A stretch of 34,228 nt of DNA, taken from positions 41,975,756 through 42,009,983 of the forward strand of contig NC_068990.1 of NCBI RefSeq assembly GCF_001194135.2, given 5' to 3'. The notes beneath the pieces were generated by a model. That model saw only the letters and a list, made by a program, of their open reading frames with translations. It did no database searches and was not told where the DNA came from. This document shows, in pieces, positions 656 to 30,859 of this stretch. Source of the stretch: Octopus bimaculoides. Lineage: Eukaryota. Both the position numbers and the translations under genes were made by a program. Numbering within the stretch: position 1 is the stretch's first letter; every line of letters starts with the position of its first letter.

Positions 656-869
656 CAAGGCATAAGATCATTCAAGGGAAATCAGTCCTGATTGTAAGGT
701 ATTGGCAAAACCCCATGAGTTGGTTAAAATATTGTGTATATTCAATTGTAAAATAATAAAATTAACTGTATATAAAACACATATACATGCATACGTATAT
801 ATGTATGTATATATATATAAGTACATGTATGTACATATATATATATATATATATATGTAAATATCTATA

Positions 870-1166
870 TCTATACAGCCCTGTATACATATACAAGTTT
901 CGATTAGGGAGCAAATATTTAAGAAAAAGTGGAAGTGTATTGGTAGCACAATTAGAAAAGACACACCAAATGTAGCGAAAAGTGCTTTACAGTGGAATCC
1001 GGATGTATATAGAAAGAGGGGTAGGCCTAAGAACTCTGGCATAGATCAACACAAAAGGAACTAGAGAAAGAGGGACATTCATGGCAGAGTATAACTACAG
1101 AAGCGAAAAAGTTATGCGAGATGGAATTCAATTATAAATGGCCTATACTCCGCATTGGAGGGTTAA
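870..1166 (+). mobile_element. RTE-clade non-LTR retrotransposon, 3' end of ORF (frameshifted)
   Basis: From 903 it reads IREQIFKKKWKCIGSTIRKDTPNVAKSALQWNPDVYRKRGRPKN. After frameshifts it continues WHRSTQKELEKEGHSW and RWNSIINGLYSALEG* (TAA 1164-1166). This matches the RTE C-terminal pattern RWxWIGH..ALxWNP.GKRKRGRP..W..GLC. Confidence 0.8.
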
Positions 1167-1724
1167 AGGCAAGAAAAAAAATATATGTCANNNNNNNNNN
1201 NNNNNNNNNNNNNNNNNNNNNNNNNNNNNNNNNNNNNNNNNNNNNNNNNNNNNNNNNNNNNNNNNNNNNNNNNNNNNNNNNNNNNNNNNNNNNNNNNNNN
1301 NNNNNNNNNNNNNNNNNNNNNNNNNNNNNNNNNNNNNNNNNNNNNNNNNNNNNNNNNNNNNNNNNNNNNNNNNNNNNNNNNNNNNNNNNNNNNNNNNNNN
1401 NNNNNNNNNNNNNNNNNNNNNNNNTTATATATTTGATCCTTTATATTGAACACTCAATATTTCATCTACATTCAATACTTTATTTCATGGTGCCATCCAT
1501 TTTTATTTTATTTTATATTATATATTGTATGTTATATTATATATTGTATATTCCATATTCTATACCCCACATTAGTTCTGCAGGAATATAAATAAAACAT
1601 AAAAAACAGACAGTGTTGGAACTCTTTTAAGCAAAATAATATATTCCTCTATACACAATCATACAAAAAAATCCACCTTTTTTTGTATTTATTTTTACTC
1701 GCATATATATATATATATATATAT

Positions 1725-11043: not shown

Positions 11044-11624
11044 TATAAAGTAAATATATATATTATAATATATATAGACAATAAACACACACACATATAT
11101 ATAAGTAAATATATATATTTAAGATATGTATGTTACTTTGTAGCTAATAATCCGCTTGTGGATGAATTACAGTAGAAATAGTAAGACTGGCTATATGACA
11201 TTTTCTTTCGTCAAGCTTTATATTTCGACCCTGAAACCAGTTCAGGTGAGGAGATAAGTACTTGAGACATAATTATTATAATGCGCGAACATTATGCATG
11301 ATGAGTGGCGTGGCGGTTTCGATTTTTATATGAAACTGGTATCATGTCTTGTAATCCATTAATGTGATGAATTTAATCCCATTAAGAACCCTAACACCCA
11401 TTGTTTTCAACGTATCTTAGAGCCTAAAAGAAATTATTAGATATTACTACTGTTGGTGTTGCTGTTGTTACTGTTATACAGCCCCAAGCAATTCCTATTG
11501 GAGTAAACCCAATGATCGAAGACAATCTGTCCATGTATTGTCTGTTTGGTTTTTTTTTTACACACTACATTTCCAATTAACCAGTTCAAAATCCGGCTTT
11601 TGTTGTGTGGTGGTTTTATGAACC

Positions 11625-12050
11625 TCAATATCCACTAGAGCTATGCCAGCGAAGCTCAAGTCCAAGGTATGACCACCTGTGATGGGCAGGTCAAAGCATA
11701 GAGGCCAAGCTAATATAGGCCACCTCTTCTCAGGGGTGGCTTATGAGCCTCAATAACCCTAAGAGTTTCGCCAGCGAAGTTCAAGTCCCAAGTAGGCGTA
11801 CCCATGGTGGATAGAGCAAAGGACAGAGTCCAAAGTAATATAGGCCATTTCTTCCCAGGGGTAAAAATGGATTTGCTTAGGGTTAATAGGCCTACATAGC
11901 AAAACAACAAAGTTACAGAAGCATCAATGACAGTTCAAAACGAAGACGTGAGAGAAGAGAGAAGCAGAAAAGAGAGCGCAGAATCGAGAACATTGGAGAA
12001 AAGTCTTGGACCGCTTATGTTCCCTAAGGAGCGAAGGGCTTAAGAAGACA
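11625..12050 (+). mobile_element. RTE-derived non-autonomous element: duplicated ~125-bp 5' unit fused to the ORF 3' end
   Basis: Two collinear units: GCCAGCGAAGYTCAAGTCC at ~11645 and ~11770, and TAATATAGGCCA..TTCxCAGGGGT at ~11711 and ~11836. These are followed by a frame ending KAEKRAQNREHWRKVLDRLCSLRSEGLKKT*, typical of an RTE C-terminus (A.DR..WR..V..LC). Confidence 0.65.
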
Positions 12051-19870: not shown

Positions 19871-21334
19871 TAGAGAGAACAAGATATGTTTCTTTAATAG
19901 CTACACAGGGCTCAACATAGAAGGGACAGAATACAAATGTAGAGTTTTTCTTNNNNNNNNNNNNNNNNNNNNNNNNNNNNNNNNNNNNNNNNNNNNNNNN
20001 NNNNNNNNNNNNNNNNNNNNNNNNNNNNNNNNNNNNNNNNNNNNNNNNNNNNCGTCTATTCCTATCTCTGCCCACATAGTCTAGATGCGTGTCCAAGGTA
20101 GAGCTACTTGAGAAAGGGAGAAGGAATGAGGGAGAGATTTTGCAGAGTAATAGGATAGAATAGTGGGAGAAGAGGGGGTAAGAGAATCAGAGAGAGAAAG
20201 AGAAAAAAACGAAAGAGTAAACAGATCGTATAGAGTGCGCATCAGAATTATTAAGAAATAAACTTACTTGGAAGAGGATGTGTGGCGTTCAATCATATAA
20301 TGATATAAATAATNNNNNNNNNNNNNNNNNNNNNNNNNNNNNNNNNNNNNNNNNNNNNNNNNNNNNNNNNNNNNNNNNNNNNNNNNNNNNNNNNNNNNNN
20401 NNNNNNNNNNNNNNNNNNNNNNNNNNNNNNNNNNNNNNNNNNNNNNNNNNNNNNNNNNNNNNNNNNNNNNNNNNNNNNNNNNNNNNNNNNNNNNNNNATA
20501 TATATATATATATATATACGTGTGAGTACGCATATATTCTGATGCCAGTAAGCCATTGCTGGAACATTAACCAGTTGATATAATGGCAGGTATGCCAATA
20601 AGCCAATATTACACATAAGCACTGGTTCTATATCACTTCTTTATTATTTATTTGGTAATTGGTTAACTATTTAACCAATTAACTTTTTGATTAATTATTC
20701 AGTTAGTCAATCAGCTAGGTTTTTCAAAGTCATTTGCAACTGAGAAAGCAAAGAAATGAATTAGGTTACCAGTAAGAACATATCTCCTTTGATAAGGCTG
20801 CATGTACAAACAGGAATTGTATTATGTAGAAAACAAACAAACCCTATGGTCAAATGTAAAGCGAGAAATGAAGTTCACCATTTAAAATTGTACGGGGTAG
20901 GGCGGTGAATGTAGAAACTAAAGTATCAAGAGTATAGAGGAAAGAATAGAGGCCCATTGGAACGAATACTGTGATAAGAAAATCACGTCAGTACTCTGTC
21001 AGCATACTAAAGATAAGCACAAATACATGATGAATAACATTTAATAAAATCTATACCACTACTGCCACTCACTCACTCACTTCTTCCTCTCCTCCTTCAT
21101 CATCCTCATCATCATCTTGTCTTCTTTTTTCTATTTCTTATCCTTTATCATCCTCCCATCTATTTCCTTCTCTTCTTTCTTCACTTTAATCTTACCCCTC
21201 ATCACATTCCCATCTTATTACACAGTCTCCTTTTCTCTCACACTCATTTTGTAACTTCTTTTGGCACACCTGTGTGTATTGTGCGAGTGCAGAATTATGT
21301 GATTTACATGATTGGGACTGATTGAAGTTCATCT

Positions 21335-22094
21335 ATGTCCAAACTCTTCGTCAGGGAACTCTTCGTCAAATTCTTGAATAATTTAAAGATTAGTGAGGAA
21401 AAGTGTGTTGAATTTGAACTTATTACCAGGGGACAAAAAAAAAACAGAACATGGAAAGAACAAAAGAAGGGTCGAATTACCAGTTCTAGTTTTGGTCATA
21501 TCTTTGTTCGTAAAGACATGATTCCATCGGACAACCTTGTAAAACAAGTAATGGGGTATAACAAAAAAATTCAAAATAGCCATACCTGCTGTGGTATAAG
21601 CCATGAGCCTGCTGTTCGACGATTATATAGAAAAAGGATATAAGCAGTTCACCCCAATACAAGTTTGAAGGATTGTGGATTGATAATTAATCCCTCCTAT
21701 ACATATCTTGATGCATGCCCAGATGGATTAGTTGACATACCTAACTTTCCAAATGGATCAGGATTGCTTGAAATTAAATGTCCATCAAGTGACAAATGGA
21801 AATGTTTATTCCCATATGAATGTAGAAAGGACAGTGCTTTCTTTTGTTCTGTTAAAGTTGTGCTGAAAGAGCATCACTCCTATTTTTATCAATTGCAAGG
21901 GCAGATGGCATTAACTGGAAAAAAATGGTGTGATTTTGTAGTATGTACCCTTAAACATCCATTGTCAGTGGAGAGGATCTACTTTGATGTGGTTAACAAT
22001 GGTGGAAAAACTGAAAACATTCTATCTTAGAGGTGTTCTGCCTGAAGTATTCTCCAGTCAAGTAAAGCGAGATGTCCCACTTTATGCAAGCTAG
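21335..22094 (+). pseudogene. YqaJ-like viral recombinase / lambda-exonuclease family (PD-(D/E)xK) reading frame, probably from a DNA transposon
   Basis: ORFs 21335-21643 and 21665-22030 are in the same frame, split by a single TAA. Motifs are TRGQ..N..W...K.GRITSSSF, GISHE, YLDACPDGLV, LEIKCP and YFYQLQGQMALTG..WCDFVV..VERI.FD. After one frameshift near 21990 it continues WLTMVEKLKTFYLRGVLPEVF...YAS* (TAG 22092-22094). Confidence 0.9.
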
Positions 22095-22193: not shown

Positions 22194-22985
22194 TATCAGG
22201 TCCTCCCATAAATTCTGTCCGATTTTACCTTTTAAAAAATTGAATGAAATTTAATAGTATTTTAGAATGTCTAATGTAATTTAAAATTATTTTTATGCAT
22301 TTGTGCACATTTAAACTAATTAAATTTTACAGAATAATAGAATTAAAATTTCTTTGATTAAAACCCTTTCTAATATGGAAGTATCCAAAGAGCATTTGAG
22401 ACACATAATGCTTTATGAGTACAAAAAAGCAAACTGCATCCGAAGCGACCCGAAACATACACTCAGTTTATGGGAAAGAATGCTTGAATGAAAGAACTTA
22501 CAGAAGATGGTTTGAAAAATTCAGAAGTGGAGATTTCAGCCTTGAAGATGAAGATCGAACAGGACGTTCATTTGAGTTTGATGATAAGCTCCTTGAGGTA
22601 TTACTTGAAGAAAATCCTGCGTTATCAGTTGAAGAATTAGCAATAAGGCTTAATTCAAACTATACAACTGTTCATCATCATCTTCAACAACTTTGAAAAT
22701 GGGTGCCTCAGGAATTGTCCGAAAGCAACTACAAATCCTGAGTTGACATTTGCACTTCTCTCCATTCTCGGGAACTCATTTCACCCTTTCTGGATAGACT
22801 TCTGACTGGTGACGAAAACTGGATCTATCGAAATGTTAAATGTCGGAAACAGTGGCTTGGTAAAAGGAAAAAAAGCTCAACCACAACCGAGAAGGGAGCT
22901 TCATGGGAAATAGGTTCTTCTCTCTATATGGTGGTATTGCAAAGGAGTAATTCACTTTGAATTGTTACCACCTTATCGGAACCAC
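22194..22985 (+). mobile_element. Mariner DNA transposon, 5' half (left TIR plus disrupted transposase)
   Basis: TA followed by TCAGGTCCTCCCATAAATTCTGTCCGATTTT, a mariner-like TIR. The ATG at 22375 gives MEVSKEHLRHIMLYEYKK, then ASEATRNI..VYG..RWFEKFRSGDFSLEDEDRTGR, WVPQEL (22700), TGDENW (first catalytic D at 22811) and SIWWYCKGVIHFELLP. It has stops and frameshifts, and the 3' half and right TIR are missing. Confidence 0.95.
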
Positions 22986-23354: not shown

Positions 23355-23645
23355 CTTTCAGACTAAACAACCAACCAGTCATTTAAACGAGAAATCCAGG
23401 CATTTGAGTATACTTGCTTCAGAAGGCTGCTACTCACCACAAAATTCTGCCCAAAACCATCCTTCAGGGCACAACTAAAGAAAGACAAAGGAATTCCTGG
23501 CGTGACTACATGAAAGACTGGACAAAGCCGCGACCCTGCTCCGCAAGACAGAGAACAGAAACCAGTGGTGACGGCTGACTGTAAAATTGTCTAGAATGGC
23601 ACCAGTTAAACAACTTGATAATGATGATGATGATGATGATGATAT
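23355..23645 (+). mobile_element. RTE-clade LINE 3' end with internal deletion and (ATG)n tail
   Basis: FKREIQAFEYTCFRRLL is joined to KTILQGT..RQRNSWRDYMKDWT, then ATLLRKTENRNQW*RLTVKLSRMAP, followed by (GAT)n. Confidence 0.8.
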
Positions 23646-28410: not shown

Positions 28411-29282
28411 TTAGTCCCTAAGACCTTTCCATTCACAACCATTTCTGCCCATGCCAGACTAAAATCTGTCTTACTCGTTGCCAGGATACAACTCGAAGGA
28501 GAATTGAACGTTATTTCTAGCAAGTCGACCGAACCCATAACGGTTTATTCCATGGCGCTACTATCGTTTACATTATGAACAGTGCAGAACAACTGGTATA
28601 ATTTCAAATTATTCAGCAAAATCTACGAACTCAAGTTCAATACTATAGTAAAATCATTTTTCCATCATTTGCAGCACCAATCTCCTTGCAAACATACAAT
28701 GGTCGCTGTGTACGTATTTTGCTTTTTCATATAAATTTCAGACCATGCGTCCATATATGAAATCGATTTTGCTTCATTTTCTTTGTTAAACTGTTGGATA
28801 TTTGTCCGATAGATCCGCTAATGACACGGTGACTAATCGATAGGAAGTGGTGTTATTGATTTAGACAATGGTCATCAGACAGATTCAGGTTTTAGTAAAT
28901 ATTCAGACTTGCCAATAGAACAAATATTAAACTTTTTCAAATTAACAATGTTGGGTTGGAGGAAATGAGAAAAAGAGGGAAAGAGAGTGGGGNNNNNNNN
29001 NNNNNNNNNNNNNNNNNNNNNNNNNNNNNNNNNNNNNNNNNNNNNNNNNNNNNNNNNNNNNNNNNNNNNNNNNNNNNNNNNNNNNNNNNNNNNNNNNNNN
29101 NNNNNNNNNNNNNNNNNNNNNNNNNNNNNNNNNNNNNNNNNNNNNNNNNNNNNNNNNNNNNNNNNNNNNNNNNNNNNNNNNNNNNNNNNNNNNNNNNNNN
29201 NNNNNNNNNNNNNNNNNNNNNNNNNNNNNNNNNNNNNNNNNNNNNNNNNNNNNNNNNNNNNNNNNNNNNNNNNNNNNNNNNN

Positions 29283-29865: not shown

Positions 29866-30211
29866 TTTCTAATTTAGGCACAAAGCCAGCATTTTAGTGG
29901 GATATAGGTGATGACATCTACCTCAGGATTTAACTGGCACTATATTTGATCGACTTCGAAAGAATTGATTTTTTTATAAAAGGGGTATACGCATGCAGAG
30001 GGACTCGAACCCGCGACCCCCAGATTACTTCTAAGGTTGACCTATAAAAGTCTAATGCTCTATCGACTGAGCTATACGTGTGGACATCGACTTCGAAAGA
30101 ATGTAGAGCAAGTTTGACCTAGGAATGATCTAAACGCTGAACCGTGAAGAGCTGGAAAAAATCCTGCAGGATATCTTTTTCCGACAAGCTAACAATTAAT
30201 GCCAATTACTC
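29866..30211 (-). mobile_element. Old SINE family A copy interrupted by a pre-tRNA retrocopy
   Basis: TTTCTAATTTAGGCACAAAGCC..TAACTGGCACT..ATCGACTTCGAAAGAAT [insertion] GTAGAGCAAGTTTGACCTAGG..GCTAACAATT..GCC is collinear with the other family A copies once 29966-30102 is removed. Confidence 0.75.
29990..30081 (-). pseudogene. Intron-containing tRNA-Lys(TTT) retropseudogene (unspliced precursor)
   Basis: Minus strand: ACACGTA TA GCTC AGTCGATA GAGC A TTAGA CTTTTA [TAGGTCAACCTTAGAAGTA] A TCTGG GGGTC GCGGG TTCGAGT CCCTC TGCATGC G. This is 73 nt plus a 19-nt intron (30026-30044) at position 37/38, with the anticodon at 30046-30048. Defects are two acceptor-stem mismatches, one T-stem mismatch, and GA instead of GG in the D-loop. 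Confidence 0.92.
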
Positions 30212-30421: not shown

Positions 30422-30859
30422 NNNNNNNNNNNNNNNNNNNNNNNNNNNNNNNNNNNNNNNNNNNNNNNNNNNNNNNNNNNNNNNNNNNNNNNNNNNNNNN
30501 NNNNNNNNNNNNNNNNNNNNNNNNNNNNNNNNNNNNNNNNNNNNNNNNNNNNNNNNNNNNNNNNNNNNNNNNNNNNNNNNNNNNNNNNNNNNNNNNNNNN
30601 NNNNNNNNNNNNNNNNNNNNNNNNNNNNNNNNNNNNNNNNNNNNNNNNNNNNNNNNNNNNNNNNNNNNNNNNNNNNNNTATATATACATATATATATATA
30701 TATTTACACATACATATGTCTATATATTTGTTTATATATATATATATATATATATATAAGAATGAGATCAAGAGACCAATGGCATAAGTAAATTTATCTT
30801 TTATGTAGAATGTCTTACAGCTGTTTCAGGGAAAATTCGATGTATCCCTTCATCGAAGA

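What the first reader, a model, noticed from the sequence alone, without database searches (positions are those of the whole stretch)
29949..30102. Retroposed primary Pol III transcript: unspliced pre-tRNA-Lys(UUU) with leader, intron, trailer, terminator, A-tail and exact 17-bp TSD
Seen: ATCGACTTCGAAAGAAT occurs exactly twice (29949-29965 and 30086-30102) and brackets a 120-bp insert. On the minus strand the insert is a 4-nt leader GTCC, the tRNA with its intron, trailer TATACCCC, TTTT, then ATAAAAAAA and TCA. There is no CCA end. Established: TSD plus A-tail is the signature of LINE-mediated target-primed reverse transcription, and TTTT is the Pol III terminator. Inference: a completely unprocessed nuclear pre-tRNA was captured before RNase P, RNase Z or TSEN acted. 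It is either a one-off retropseudogene or a member of a minimal tRNA-only SINE family.
Basis: partly seen in the sequence, partly recalled or inferred. Interest (0 to 1): 0.72.

Follow-up and report, generated by a model that had tools for sequence, protein, structure and literature searches.

The report
Retrocopied unspliced tRNA-Lys-like transcript, octopus
A 120-base copy of an unprocessed, intron-containing lysine-tRNA-like transcript has been pasted into an octopus-type genome between two exact 17-base target duplications; it is a tidy but fairly ordinary case of LINE-style retrocopying of a small RNA.

Summary
ATCGACTTCGAAAGAAT occurs exactly twice (29949-29965, 30086-30102) and brackets a 120-bp insert. 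On the minus strand the insert reads GTCC, a 92-nt tRNA-like body with a 19-nt intron at 37/38, TATACCCC, TTTT, ATAAAAAAA, TCA. There is no CCA.

Controls support an insertion. 91 genuine intron-bearing tRNA-Lys(UUU) genes from metagenomes have flanking repeats of 9 nt or less. An A7 run follows an isolated T4 only once in 318 cases in the window, and that case is this element.

The window is octopus-type DNA. The intron is not exotic: animal-type Lys(UUU) genes with introns of 10-24 nt and G at intron position -3 are common in these metagenome contigs, and this intron fits them.

The body is not a canonical tRNA-Lys. Nine of 14 acceptor positions differ, three pairs changed compensatorily, two are broken, G19 is A, and it scores 37.6 bits against 52-63.

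Best reading: a target-primed retrocopy of an unprocessed Pol III transcript from a divergent tRNA-Lys-like source. Copy number, parent locus and empty site could not be tested, because no cephalopod genome was searchable. Retrocopies of unprocessed tRNAs are already known in mammals, so interest is moderate.

The parts
29949..29965 (.). Target-site duplication, copy next to the element's 3' end (ATCGACTTCGAAAGAAT on the + strand)
   Evidence: Exact 17-mer, 2 copies only, chance 0.03. Among 91 genuine Lys(UUU) genes the longest flanking repeat is 9 nt.
29966..29968 (-). TCA, three unexplained bases between the A tract and the duplication
   Evidence: Read directly. Possibly the RNA's last bases, untemplated bases, or the end of a LINE RNA used before a template switch (inference).
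29969..29977 (-). A-rich tail ATAAAAAAA
   Evidence: An A7 run within 14 nt after an isolated T4 occurs 1/318 times in the window (this case) and 0/79 times after the terminators of real genes.
29978..29981 (-). TTTT, Pol III terminator
   Evidence: Read directly. In 91 genuine genes a T4+ run lies 0-9 nt after the discriminator, mode 5; here it is 8 nt.
29982..29989 (-). 3' trailer TATACCCC (no CCA)
   Evidence: Read directly.
29990..30081 (-). tRNA-Lys(UUU)-like body, 92 nt including the intron. Anticodon UUU at 30048-30046, B box GGTTCGAGTCC at 30011-30001, A box TAGCTCAGTCGA at 30074-30063.
   Evidence: Rfam tRNA 37.6 bits against 52-63 for genuine genes. 18/21 cloverleaf pairs, with mismatches at 1:72, 4:69 and 50:64. 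G19A is absent from all 91 comparison genes although the search pattern allowed it.
30026..30044 (-). 19-nt intron TAGGTCAACCTTAGAAGTA at canonical position 37/38
   Evidence: Its length sits at the mode (19-20) of 91 genuine genes, and G at intron -3 matches 91/91. Its 3' part UAGAAGU pairs with ACUUUUA of the anticodon loop in the predicted fold.
30082..30085 (-). 5' leader GTCC; the first base is a purine
   Evidence: Read directly. Consistent with a Pol III start a few nt upstream of the mature 5' end (established knowledge).
30086..30102 (.). Target-site duplication, copy next to the element's 5' end

Best explanation
This is an RNA-mediated insertion. A Pol III primary transcript of an intron-bearing tRNA-Lys(UUU)-like gene carried its 4-nt leader, unspliced 19-nt intron, 8-nt trailer and U4 terminator. 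It acquired or carried a short A-rich 3' end. The reverse transcriptase of a resident LINE then copied it into a staggered chromosomal break by target-primed reverse transcription, and filling the 17-nt stagger produced the duplication.

The host is an octopus-type genome. The source was not the canonical tRNA-Lys(UUU) gene but a divergent paralogue, possibly itself an earlier retrocopy, whose acceptor stem had been remodelled while staying largely paired. The present copy is not a working tRNA, although its A box, B box and terminator are intact, so it could still be transcribed.

- **Shown:** the duplication, the anatomy, the divergence from genuine genes, and the non-random A tract.
- **Inferred:** the RNA intermediate, the LINE enzyme, how the A tract was added, and the nature of the source.
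For: - The 17-bp duplication is exact, sharply bounded and unique. All 91 genuine intron-bearing Lys(UUU) genes have flanking repeats of 9 nt or less.
- The insert edges coincide with a Pol III unit: a purine start at -4, and T4 8 nt after the discriminator, within the 0-9 nt range of real genes.
- The A7 run after T4 is non-random: 1/318 in the window, 0/79 in real genes.
- The intron is at 37/38 with the modal length and the invariant G at -3, so the transcript had not met the splicing endonuclease. No CCA is present and both leader and trailer remain, so neither end was processed.
- To my knowledge, 17 bp exceeds the duplications of DNA transposons (2-11 bp). LTR elements give 4-6 bp.
- The host lineage has LINEs and SINEs. 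The window's YqaJ-type element is 75-81% identical in protein and 89.6% in DNA to Octopus bimaculoides. In O. vulgaris, LINEs are 12.9% and SINEs 11.6% of the genome, with recently active L1-Tx1, CR1, RTE and Dong-R4 (PMC13282606).
- Unprocessed tRNAs are known retrocopy templates in mammals (PMC5322556).
- Divergent source: 9 of 14 acceptor positions differ against about 3 of 58 in the core. Pairs 3:70, 6:67 and 7:66 changed on both sides yet still pair. Both broken pairs (1:72, 4:69) are explicable as CpG-to-CpA changes.
Against: - No parent locus, second copy or empty site could be examined. The only other octopus DNA reached (24 kb) has no copy and no tRNA.
- The A tract is short, interrupted by a T, and separated from the duplication by TCA.
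- The primer strand ends ...AAGAAT, which is not the T-rich L1 consensus.
- A Pol III transcript that stops at T4 has no encoded A tail, so an extra, unobserved step is needed.
- A perfect duplication alongside a defective tRNA body cannot date the defects. If all 5 defects arose after insertion, two intact 17-mers would still be expected with probability about 0.15.
- The element lies in a 1.1-kb contig between assembly gaps.
Confidence: 0.72

Rival explanations
1. Same insertion mechanism, but the element is one member of a self-propagating, multi-copy 'tRNA-only' SINE family. Each copy would carry its own internal promoter and terminator, be re-transcribed, gain a fresh A-rich end and be retrocopied again.
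For: - The A box, B box and terminator are all inside the insert.
- The acceptor stem is heavily remodelled while the promoter-bearing core is conserved (9/14 against about 3/58). That is the selection pattern expected for a Pol III-driven retroposon.
- Cephalopod genomes hold very many tRNA-derived loci: about 17,000 in giant squid, 'many likely SINEs' (PMC6962438).
- O. vulgaris has 900 recently active SINE families, 893 of them unclassified.
Against: - There is no second copy in the 34-kb window or in 24 kb of O. bimaculoides.
- There is no tRNA-unrelated body or LINE-derived tail, as typical SINEs have.
- The A tract lies after the terminator, so it would not be inherited by the next transcript.
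- Three acceptor pairs kept pairing through double changes, which a pure promoter-only constraint does not predict.
Confidence: 0.25
2. A chimeric retrocopy of the U6/L1 type. Reverse transcription began on the 3' end of a LINE RNA, here only about 12 nt (ATAAAAAAATCA). It then switched template to the 3' U-tract of the nuclear pre-tRNA-like transcript.
For: - It accounts for an A-rich piece plus TCA lying after a complete T4 terminator without invoking polyadenylation of a Pol III transcript.
- A LINE-like 3' fragment in the same window ends ...AAGAAAAAAAATATATGTCA just before an N gap, which is a similar A-run-then-TCA ending.
- Chimeric LINE-1 insertions with non-coding RNAs, including U6/LINE-1 chimeras, are described in mammals (abstract of bioRxiv 10.1101/2025.02.02.635956).
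Against: Twelve bases are too few to assign to any LINE. The resemblance to the fragment at 1166-1190 is weak and its true end is hidden by an N gap. No LINE consensus from this genome was available.
Confidence: 0.1
3. DNA-level event. A resident or copied tRNA-like gene was inserted as filler DNA during repair of a staggered double-strand break, or by an unknown DNA transposon, with no RNA intermediate.
For: A staggered break plus fill-in would also give a duplication. Retention of intron, leader and trailer is what a DNA copy would show by default.
Against: A DNA copy has no reason to begin 4 nt before the tRNA and end right after its terminator plus an A run. To my knowledge, 17 bp is outside known DNA-transposon duplications. 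Apart from the tRNA's own acceptor arms, I saw no terminal inverted repeats when reading the insert; the inverted-repeat listing shows only its 25 longest pairs.
Confidence: 0.07
4. An ordinary resident tRNA gene or pseudogene that happens to be flanked by a chance or slippage-made 17-bp repeat, or an assembly artefact.
For: The tRNA-like body has an intact promoter and terminator like a normal gene. The locus is in a short contig between gaps of a microsatellite-rich scaffold.
Against: Chance expectation for the 17-mer pair is 0.03 per window, and it brackets the only tRNA in the window. 0 of 91 real genes have a repeat longer than 9 nt. The 17-mer is complex sequence, not a microsatellite. 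Two copies 137 bp apart lie within the span of a single read or read pair, so a collapse or expansion artefact is unlikely.
Confidence: 0.05
5. Solo LTR of a Helenus-type miniature LTR retrotransposon, whose LTRs carry a tRNA-Lys-TTT-like sequence in molluscs.
For: Helenus LTRs of about 120 bp exist, and molluscan ones resemble tRNA-Lys-TTT (PMC10886601). If the boundary is shifted by one base, the insert reads TG...CA.
Against: Animal Helenus makes 4-bp duplications, and in molluscs it is reported only from pteriomorph bivalves. Here the repeat is 16-17 bp, and the 4 bp flanking a TG...CA reading (TCGA / ATTC) do not match. No second LTR was found: BLAST of the insert against the window returns no second copy. 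I did not search for a primer-binding site or polypurine tract.
Confidence: 0.01

Closest known systems
Tailless tRNA retropseudogenes of mammals (Schmitz et al. 2004; Noll et al. 2015, PMC5322556)
   Same: Both are LINE-dependent retrocopies of tRNAs flanked by target-site duplications, and templates explicitly include unprocessed nuclear pre-tRNAs. Priming there uses short complementarity between target and RNA end rather than a long poly(A).
   Different: Those copies are 3'-truncated in loops and lack any oligo(A). This one is full length through trailer and terminator, keeps an intron, has an A-rich tract, and is in a cephalopod.
Simple tRNA-derived SINEs (for example rodent ID elements; octopus OK/OR1/OR2 and squid SK families of Ohshima and Okada)
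   Same: tRNA-derived head with internal A and B boxes, short length, A-rich end and target-site duplications. Octopus and squid are known to harbour tRNA-derived SINEs (PMC9223172).
   Different: There is no tRNA-unrelated body or LINE-matching tail. The terminator lies inside the element, upstream of the A tract. An intron is retained. Family membership (many copies) could not be tested.
Genuine intron-containing tRNA-Lys(UUU) genes of marine invertebrates (91 genes on 88 metagenome contigs, L002-L089)
   Same: D arm, anticodon arm, anticodon loop CUUUUA, variable loop and T arm are nearly identical. L053, L067, L068 and L072 share the very T arm GCGGGTTCGAGTCCCTC. The intron is at 37/38 with modal length and G at -3, and a T4 terminator follows a few nt downstream.
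   Different: The real genes have the acceptor stem GCCCGG(T/C/A) (89/91) and G18G19, score 52-63 bits, and have no flanking repeat longer than 9 nt and no A run longer than 5 after the terminator.
U6/L1 chimeric retrocopies
   Same: A full-length nuclear Pol III transcript ending in its U tract, joined to an A-rich 3' piece, with the whole flanked by a duplication.
   Different: The 3' piece here is only 12 nt and cannot be assigned to a LINE. The mechanism is not demonstrated outside mammals.

Membership tests
Target-primed (LINE-mediated) retrocopy | Flanking target-site duplication of variable length (about 5-20+ bp) | tested here: met
   Exact 17-bp repeat abutting both ends; control genes reach 9 nt at most.
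Target-primed (LINE-mediated) retrocopy | A-rich or LINE-derived 3' tail abutting the 3' duplication | tested here: inconclusive
   ATAAAAAAA is non-random after T4 (1/318; 0/79). It is short, interrupted, and separated from the duplication by TCA.
Target-primed (LINE-mediated) retrocopy | Insert boundaries equal the boundaries of an RNA | tested here: met
   It starts at a purine 4 nt upstream of position 1 and ends after T4 plus the tail. The trailer length is within the range of real genes. The transcript itself was not observed.
Target-primed (LINE-mediated) retrocopy | Empty site in an orthologue or allele, and a parent locus elsewhere | not testable with these tools
   No cephalopod genome is searchable by DNA. 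Protein-based look-ups gave only one 24-kb octopus locus.
Target-primed (LINE-mediated) retrocopy | L1-type target TT/AAAA (applies only if the enzyme is L1-like) | tested here: not met
   The inferred nick site is ...GAAAGAAT^GTAGAG on the + strand, and the duplication starts with a single A in element sense.
tRNA-derived SINE | Internal Pol III promoter (A and B boxes) | tested here: met
   A box TAGCTCAGTCGA and B box GGTTCGAGTCC.
tRNA-derived SINE | Many dispersed copies forming a family | not testable with these tools
   No second copy in the window or L001, but 58 kb is far too little to judge.
tRNA-derived SINE | tRNA-unrelated body and/or tail shared with a partner LINE | tested here: not met
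   Only 24 nt follow the tRNA-like body. They show no similarity to the LINE-like fragments in the window.
Functional tRNA-Lys(UUU) gene | Fully paired cloverleaf and the conserved G18-G19 | tested here: not met
   A1:C72 and C4:A69 are mismatched and G19 is A. The cloverleaf is not the minimum-energy fold. G19A occurs in 0 of 91 comparison genes.
Functional tRNA-Lys(UUU) gene | Canonical metazoan acceptor stem GCCCGG.../...CGGGC | tested here: not met
   ACACGTA/TGCATGC here, against GCCCGG in 89 of 91 genes although the search pattern left the stem free.
Functional tRNA-Lys(UUU) gene | Covariance-model score like that of genuine genes | tested here: not met
   37.6 bits against 52.4-62.7 for 15 genuine Lys(UUU) genes.
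Functional tRNA-Lys(UUU) gene | Intron at 37/38 with an anticodon-intron pair (C32 with G at intron -3) | tested here: met
   19-nt intron with G at -3, as in 91/91 real genes. The A-I pair concept is from PMC4090602.
Tailless retropseudogene (mammalian type) | 3' truncation in a loop and absence of oligo(A) | tested here: not met
   The copy is full length through the terminator and has an A7 tract. The definition is from PMC5322556.
Helenus solo LTR | 4-bp duplication (animals) | tested here: not met
   The repeat is 16-17 bp, and the 4-bp flanks of a TG...CA reading do not match. The definition is from PMC10886601.

The most novel reading that the evidence does not exclude
Octopus genomes may harbour a self-renewing family of minimal, intron-bearing 'pre-tRNA SINEs'. 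These would be complete Pol III units (leader, tRNA-like body with intron, trailer, terminator) whose nuclear primary transcripts receive a short post-transcriptional A-rich tail. That tail could be the oligoadenylation mark that nuclear surveillance places on misfolded pre-tRNAs. The transcripts would then be captured by a LINE reverse transcriptase inside the nucleus, before RNase P, RNase Z or the splicing endonuclease act.
Probability: 0.15. Interest if true: 0.65.

Novelty: new variant of a known kind. Interest (0 to 1): 0.38.

Why it matters
If the reading holds, this locus is a clean molecular fossil of a complete Pol III primary transcript. It shows that in a cephalopod, reverse-transcriptase machinery can reach strictly nuclear, unprocessed pre-tRNA-like RNA, and it records that RNA's leader, trailer and termination point.

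It also offers a possible first step by which a tRNA gene becomes a SINE: a retrocopy that carries its own promoter and terminator. That bears on why cephalopod genomes hold thousands of tRNA-derived loci.

As a by-product, the survey shows that introns in tRNA-Lys(UUU) are common in the eukaryotic (probably invertebrate) contigs of these mostly marine metagenomes. They share an invariant G at intron position -3. I did not find this described in the papers searched.

The limits are plain. This is one locus with no genome-wide support, and the principle that unprocessed tRNAs can be retrocopied is already established in mammals.

Tried and rejected
- **Protein trick.** I searched the open frame across the element (29933-30118, minus strand) as a 'protein' to catch other copies. 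No candidate was found.
- **Exact look-ups of window ORFs.** These were meant to find the source record or other individuals' contigs. None is on record.
- **Exact intron strings in collections.** No match in the metagenome, viral or prokaryote-genome collections.
- **Third protein search.** I used the window's mariner and LINE-like pieces to harvest more octopus loci. It gave only 6 hits, none on long octopus contigs, and the look-ups gave 1.3-1.6-kb read contigs. P0001 and P0002 are not on record. A genome sample large enough to judge copy number was therefore not obtainable.
- **Rfam at E-value threshold.** It returned about 150 microRNA and snoRNA 'hits' that all sit on TA/TG microsatellites. 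I rejected them as artefacts; no second tRNA-like sequence was found.
- **Long 'inverted repeats' around the element (I1-I7).** I reject them as mostly N-against-N artefacts: the paired arms largely coincide with the two assembly gaps, flanked by TA/TG-rich sequence.
- **Homology of this intron to a particular real intron (best L010).** Not significant: 34 of 500 shuffles score as well.
- **The T-stem C50:U64 'mismatch' as evidence of decay.** Rejected, because several genuine genes share the identical T arm.
- **Dating the defects from the perfect duplication.** Inconclusive (probability about 0.15).
- **Helenus solo LTR and DNA-transposon origins.** Rejected on duplication length (and general knowledge).
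- **Papers not held.** The octopus OK/OR SINE paper, the squid SK paper and the octopus genome paper are not in the library.

Full report
**1.
- Reading both strands shows ATCGACTTCGAAAGAAT at 29949-29965 and again at 30086-30102. There is no third copy even at 3 mismatches. The chance expectation is 0.03 per window, and none of 100 shuffles reaches two matches.
- The identity stops sharply at 17 nt on both sides.
- In the whole window only six non-low-complexity direct repeats of at least 14 nt are spaced 30-600 nt apart. Two of the other five lie in tandem arrays and three are near-simple sequence.
No CCA follows the discriminator.
- Rfam's tRNA model matches 30081-29990 at 37.6 bits (gathering score 29). 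It shows the anticodon loop CUUUUA and a 20-nt insertion after position 37.
- ARAGORN finds the same gene but labels it 'Stop (tta)', because it places the intron differently. The covariance alignment supports Lys(UUU).

**2. Where the window comes from.**
- The window is 27-40% G+C in 2-kb windows, is extremely rich in microsatellites (99 TRF rows), and carries 11 runs of N.
- It contains a mariner remnant and a YqaJ/alkaline-exonuclease pseudogene.
- The best protein matches of that pseudogene are Octopus bimaculoides at 75-81% identity. The next best are bivalves and unnamed metagenome or read-assembly proteins at about 45%.
- Its DNA is 89.6% identical over 724 bp to an O. bimaculoides chromosome.
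- The window is therefore from an octopus or a close relative; the exact species is not established.
- The element lies in a 1,139-bp contig (29283-30421) between two gaps. The long 'inverted repeats' that the repeat finder reported around it are largely N paired with N, with TA/TG-rich sequence at their edges.

**3. The intron is normal for this kind of gene.**
- Introns in tRNA-Lys(UUU) are not a feature of the model animals I know, so I scanned the metagenome collection. The pattern fixed only the D arm, the anticodon loop and the T arm, and required 10-24 extra bases after position 37.
- It returned 88 contigs with 91 genes (71 distinct). They come mostly from marine and invertebrate-associated samples.
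- All are animal-type Lys(UUU) genes with an intron at 37/38.
- Intron lengths run 10-24 nt with a mode of 19-20. The nucleotide at intron position -3 is G in 91/91, which is the partner of C32 in the eukaryotic anticodon-intron pair (concept in PMC4090602).
- A T4+ terminator follows 0-9 nt after the discriminator, with a mode of 5.
- The octopus element fits all of these: a 19-nt intron, G at -3, and T4 after 8 nt.
- Its intron 3' part UAGAAGU pairs with ACUUUUA of the anticodon loop around a small hairpin in the predicted fold.
- The intron therefore looks like a real, splice-competent intron that was never removed.
- Its sequence is not significantly similar to any particular intron in the set (34/500 shuffles).

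**4. The same genes serve as controls for the insertion signature.**
- Among the 91 genuine genes, the longest exact repeat shared between 60 nt upstream and 80 nt downstream is 9 nt. Here it is 17 nt, placed 4 nt before and 24 nt after the tRNA-like body.
- Among 79 distinct terminators, the longest A run in the next 14 nt is 5. Here it is 7.
- Within the AT-rich window itself, an A7 run follows an isolated T4 in 1 of 318 cases, and that case is this element.
- The duplication and the A tract are each non-random, and together they frame precisely one Pol III transcription unit.

**5. The body is not a working tRNA-Lys and is not a copy of the canonical gene.**
- 89 of the 91 genes carry the acceptor stem GCCCGG(T/C/A), although the pattern left the stem free. 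The other two, on roughly 90-kb contigs, carry GCCTTAC or GCCTTGC. The element has ACACGTA/TGCATGC.
- Nine of 14 acceptor positions differ, against about three of 58 in the rest of the body.
- Three pairs (3:70, 6:67, 7:66) changed on both sides and still pair.
- Two pairs (1:72 A-C and 4:69 C-A) are broken by single changes that are each explicable as CpG-to-CpA.
- G19, which is universally conserved, is A here and in none of the 91 genes, even though the pattern allowed it.
- The element scores 37.6 bits against 52.4-62.7 for 15 genuine genes.
- The C50:U64 'mismatch' is shared with genuine genes (L053, L067, L068, L072), so it is not decay.
- The pattern is a conserved promoter-bearing core plus a remodelled but still mostly paired acceptor stem. 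This points to a divergent tRNA-like paralogue, or an earlier retrocopy lineage, as the source.
- Whether the two breaks and G19A arose before or after insertion cannot be decided. If all five defects were post-insertion, the two 17-mers would still be expected to stay identical with probability about 0.15.

**6. Mechanism.**
- The only mechanism I know that gives a 17-bp duplication around an insert whose ends match an RNA is target-primed reverse transcription by a non-LTR retrotransposon.
- DNA transposons make duplications of 2-11 bp and LTR elements 4-6 bp. Animal Helenus miniature LTR elements, which carry tRNA-Lys-TTT-like sequence in molluscs, make 4 bp (PMC10886601).
- Octopus genomes carry the machinery. 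In O. vulgaris, LINEs are 12.9% and SINEs 11.6% of the genome, and recently active families include L1-Tx1, CR1, RTE and Dong-R4 (PMC13282606).
- The window itself holds two LINE-like 3' fragments. One ends in an A8 run and the other in (ATG)n.
- The leader, intron, trailer and U-tract are all present and CCA is absent. The template had therefore not been cut by RNase P, RNase Z or the splicing endonuclease, and was a nuclear primary transcript.

**7. Weak points.**
- A Pol III transcript that ends at T4 encodes no A tail, so the ATAAAAAAA-TCA piece needs its own explanation. Three options remain open:
  - post-transcriptional tailing;
  - reverse transcription that started on the last about 12 nt of a LINE RNA and then switched to the pre-tRNA, as in U6/L1 chimeras;
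  - untemplated addition.
- The inferred nick site (...GAAAGAAT^GTAGAG) is not the T-rich L1 consensus.
- No parent locus, further copy or empty site could be examined.

**8. What could not be done.**
- No cephalopod genome is searchable by DNA with these tools.
- Indirect routes all failed. These were the element's open frame used as a protein query, exact look-ups of window ORFs and exact intron strings in three collections.
- A transposase and LINE query to harvest octopus loci also failed.
- The single octopus locus obtained (24 kb) has neither a copy nor any tRNA.
- The choice between a one-off retrocopy and a minimal SINE family therefore remains open. I put the family reading at about 0.25.

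**9. Comparison with what is known.**
- The closest described class is the tRNA-derived 'tailless retropseudogenes' of mammals. They are L1-dependent and flanked by duplications, and their templates include unprocessed nuclear tRNAs (PMC5322556). They differ in being 3'-truncated and having no A tract.
- Simple tRNA-derived SINEs share the internal promoter, short length and A-rich end. They normally have a tRNA-unrelated body or a LINE-matching tail, and their terminator is not upstream of the A tract.
- Octopus and squid are long known to carry tRNA-derived SINEs (PMC9223172), and giant squid has about 17,000 tRNA-derived loci (PMC6962438).
- The element works like these, but it fails defining features of each class. 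It is best filed as a new variant of a known kind: a full-length, intron-retaining, terminator-containing pre-tRNA-like retrocopy with a short A-rich end.

**10. Verdict.**
An RNA-mediated insertion of an unprocessed Pol III transcript is the best explanation (about 0.72).
- The template was a divergent tRNA-like RNA rather than genuine pre-tRNA-Lys. The intron is ordinary for the lineage. LINE involvement and the origin of the tail are inferred, and the principle is already known from mammals.
- Interest is moderate (0.38). It would rise if a genome-wide search showed a family of such units.

Noticed in passing
L002-L089 (88 metagenome contigs, 91 genes): Animal-type tRNA-Lys(UUU) genes with an intron at 37/38 are widespread in marine and invertebrate-associated metagenomes. 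Introns are 10-24 nt, G is invariant at intron -3, and the acceptor is GCCCGG in 89/91. I found no description of this in the papers searched.
   Followed up: partly
L011 and L029 (contigs of 97.6 and 87.9 kb): Two intron-bearing Lys(UUU)-like genes have a different acceptor stem (GCCTTAC/GCCTTGC) and very AT-rich introns, on long contigs. The source organism is unknown; a protist or a large virus is possible.
   Followed up: no
L036 278-2170: Eight tRNA genes are packed into about 2 kb on one metagenome contig, including the intron-bearing Lys(UUU) gene.
   Followed up: no
window 21326-22027 (+): A YqaJ / viral alkaline-exonuclease-type gene remnant with one in-frame stop at 21641-21643. It is 75-81% identical in protein and 89.6% in DNA to Octopus bimaculoides copies, and is probably part of a mobile element.
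   Followed up: partly
window 22324-22957 (+): A decayed mariner/Mos1-type transposase (HTH_48 domain) with frameshifts. The best matches are read-assembly contigs and Limulus SETMAR-like proteins.
   Followed up: partly
window 861-1190 (+) and 23366-23645 (+): Two LINE-like C-terminal fragments carry motifs such as ...WNP..KRGRPKN... and ...RNSWRDYMKDWT.... The first ends in an A8 run followed by TATATGTCA just before an N gap. The second ends in an (ATG)n tail.
   Followed up: partly
window 11616-11862: Two tandem copies of a 125-bp unit (76% matches) whose reverse strand contains a tRNA-like A-box string (GTAGCTCTAGTGGTTA). It may be a SINE-derived duplication.
   Followed up: no
window 28993-29282 and 30422-30678 (and nine other N runs): Assembly gaps. 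The repeat finder reports arms spanning them as 93-98% complementary 300-nt inverted repeats, which is mostly N against N, with TA/TG-rich sequence at the arm edges.
   Followed up: yes
whole window: Microsatellite density is extreme (99 TRF rows in 34 kb). At a relaxed threshold, Rfam gives about 150 spurious mir-297, mir-3149, mir-466 and snoRNA hits on TA/TG arrays.
   Followed up: yes
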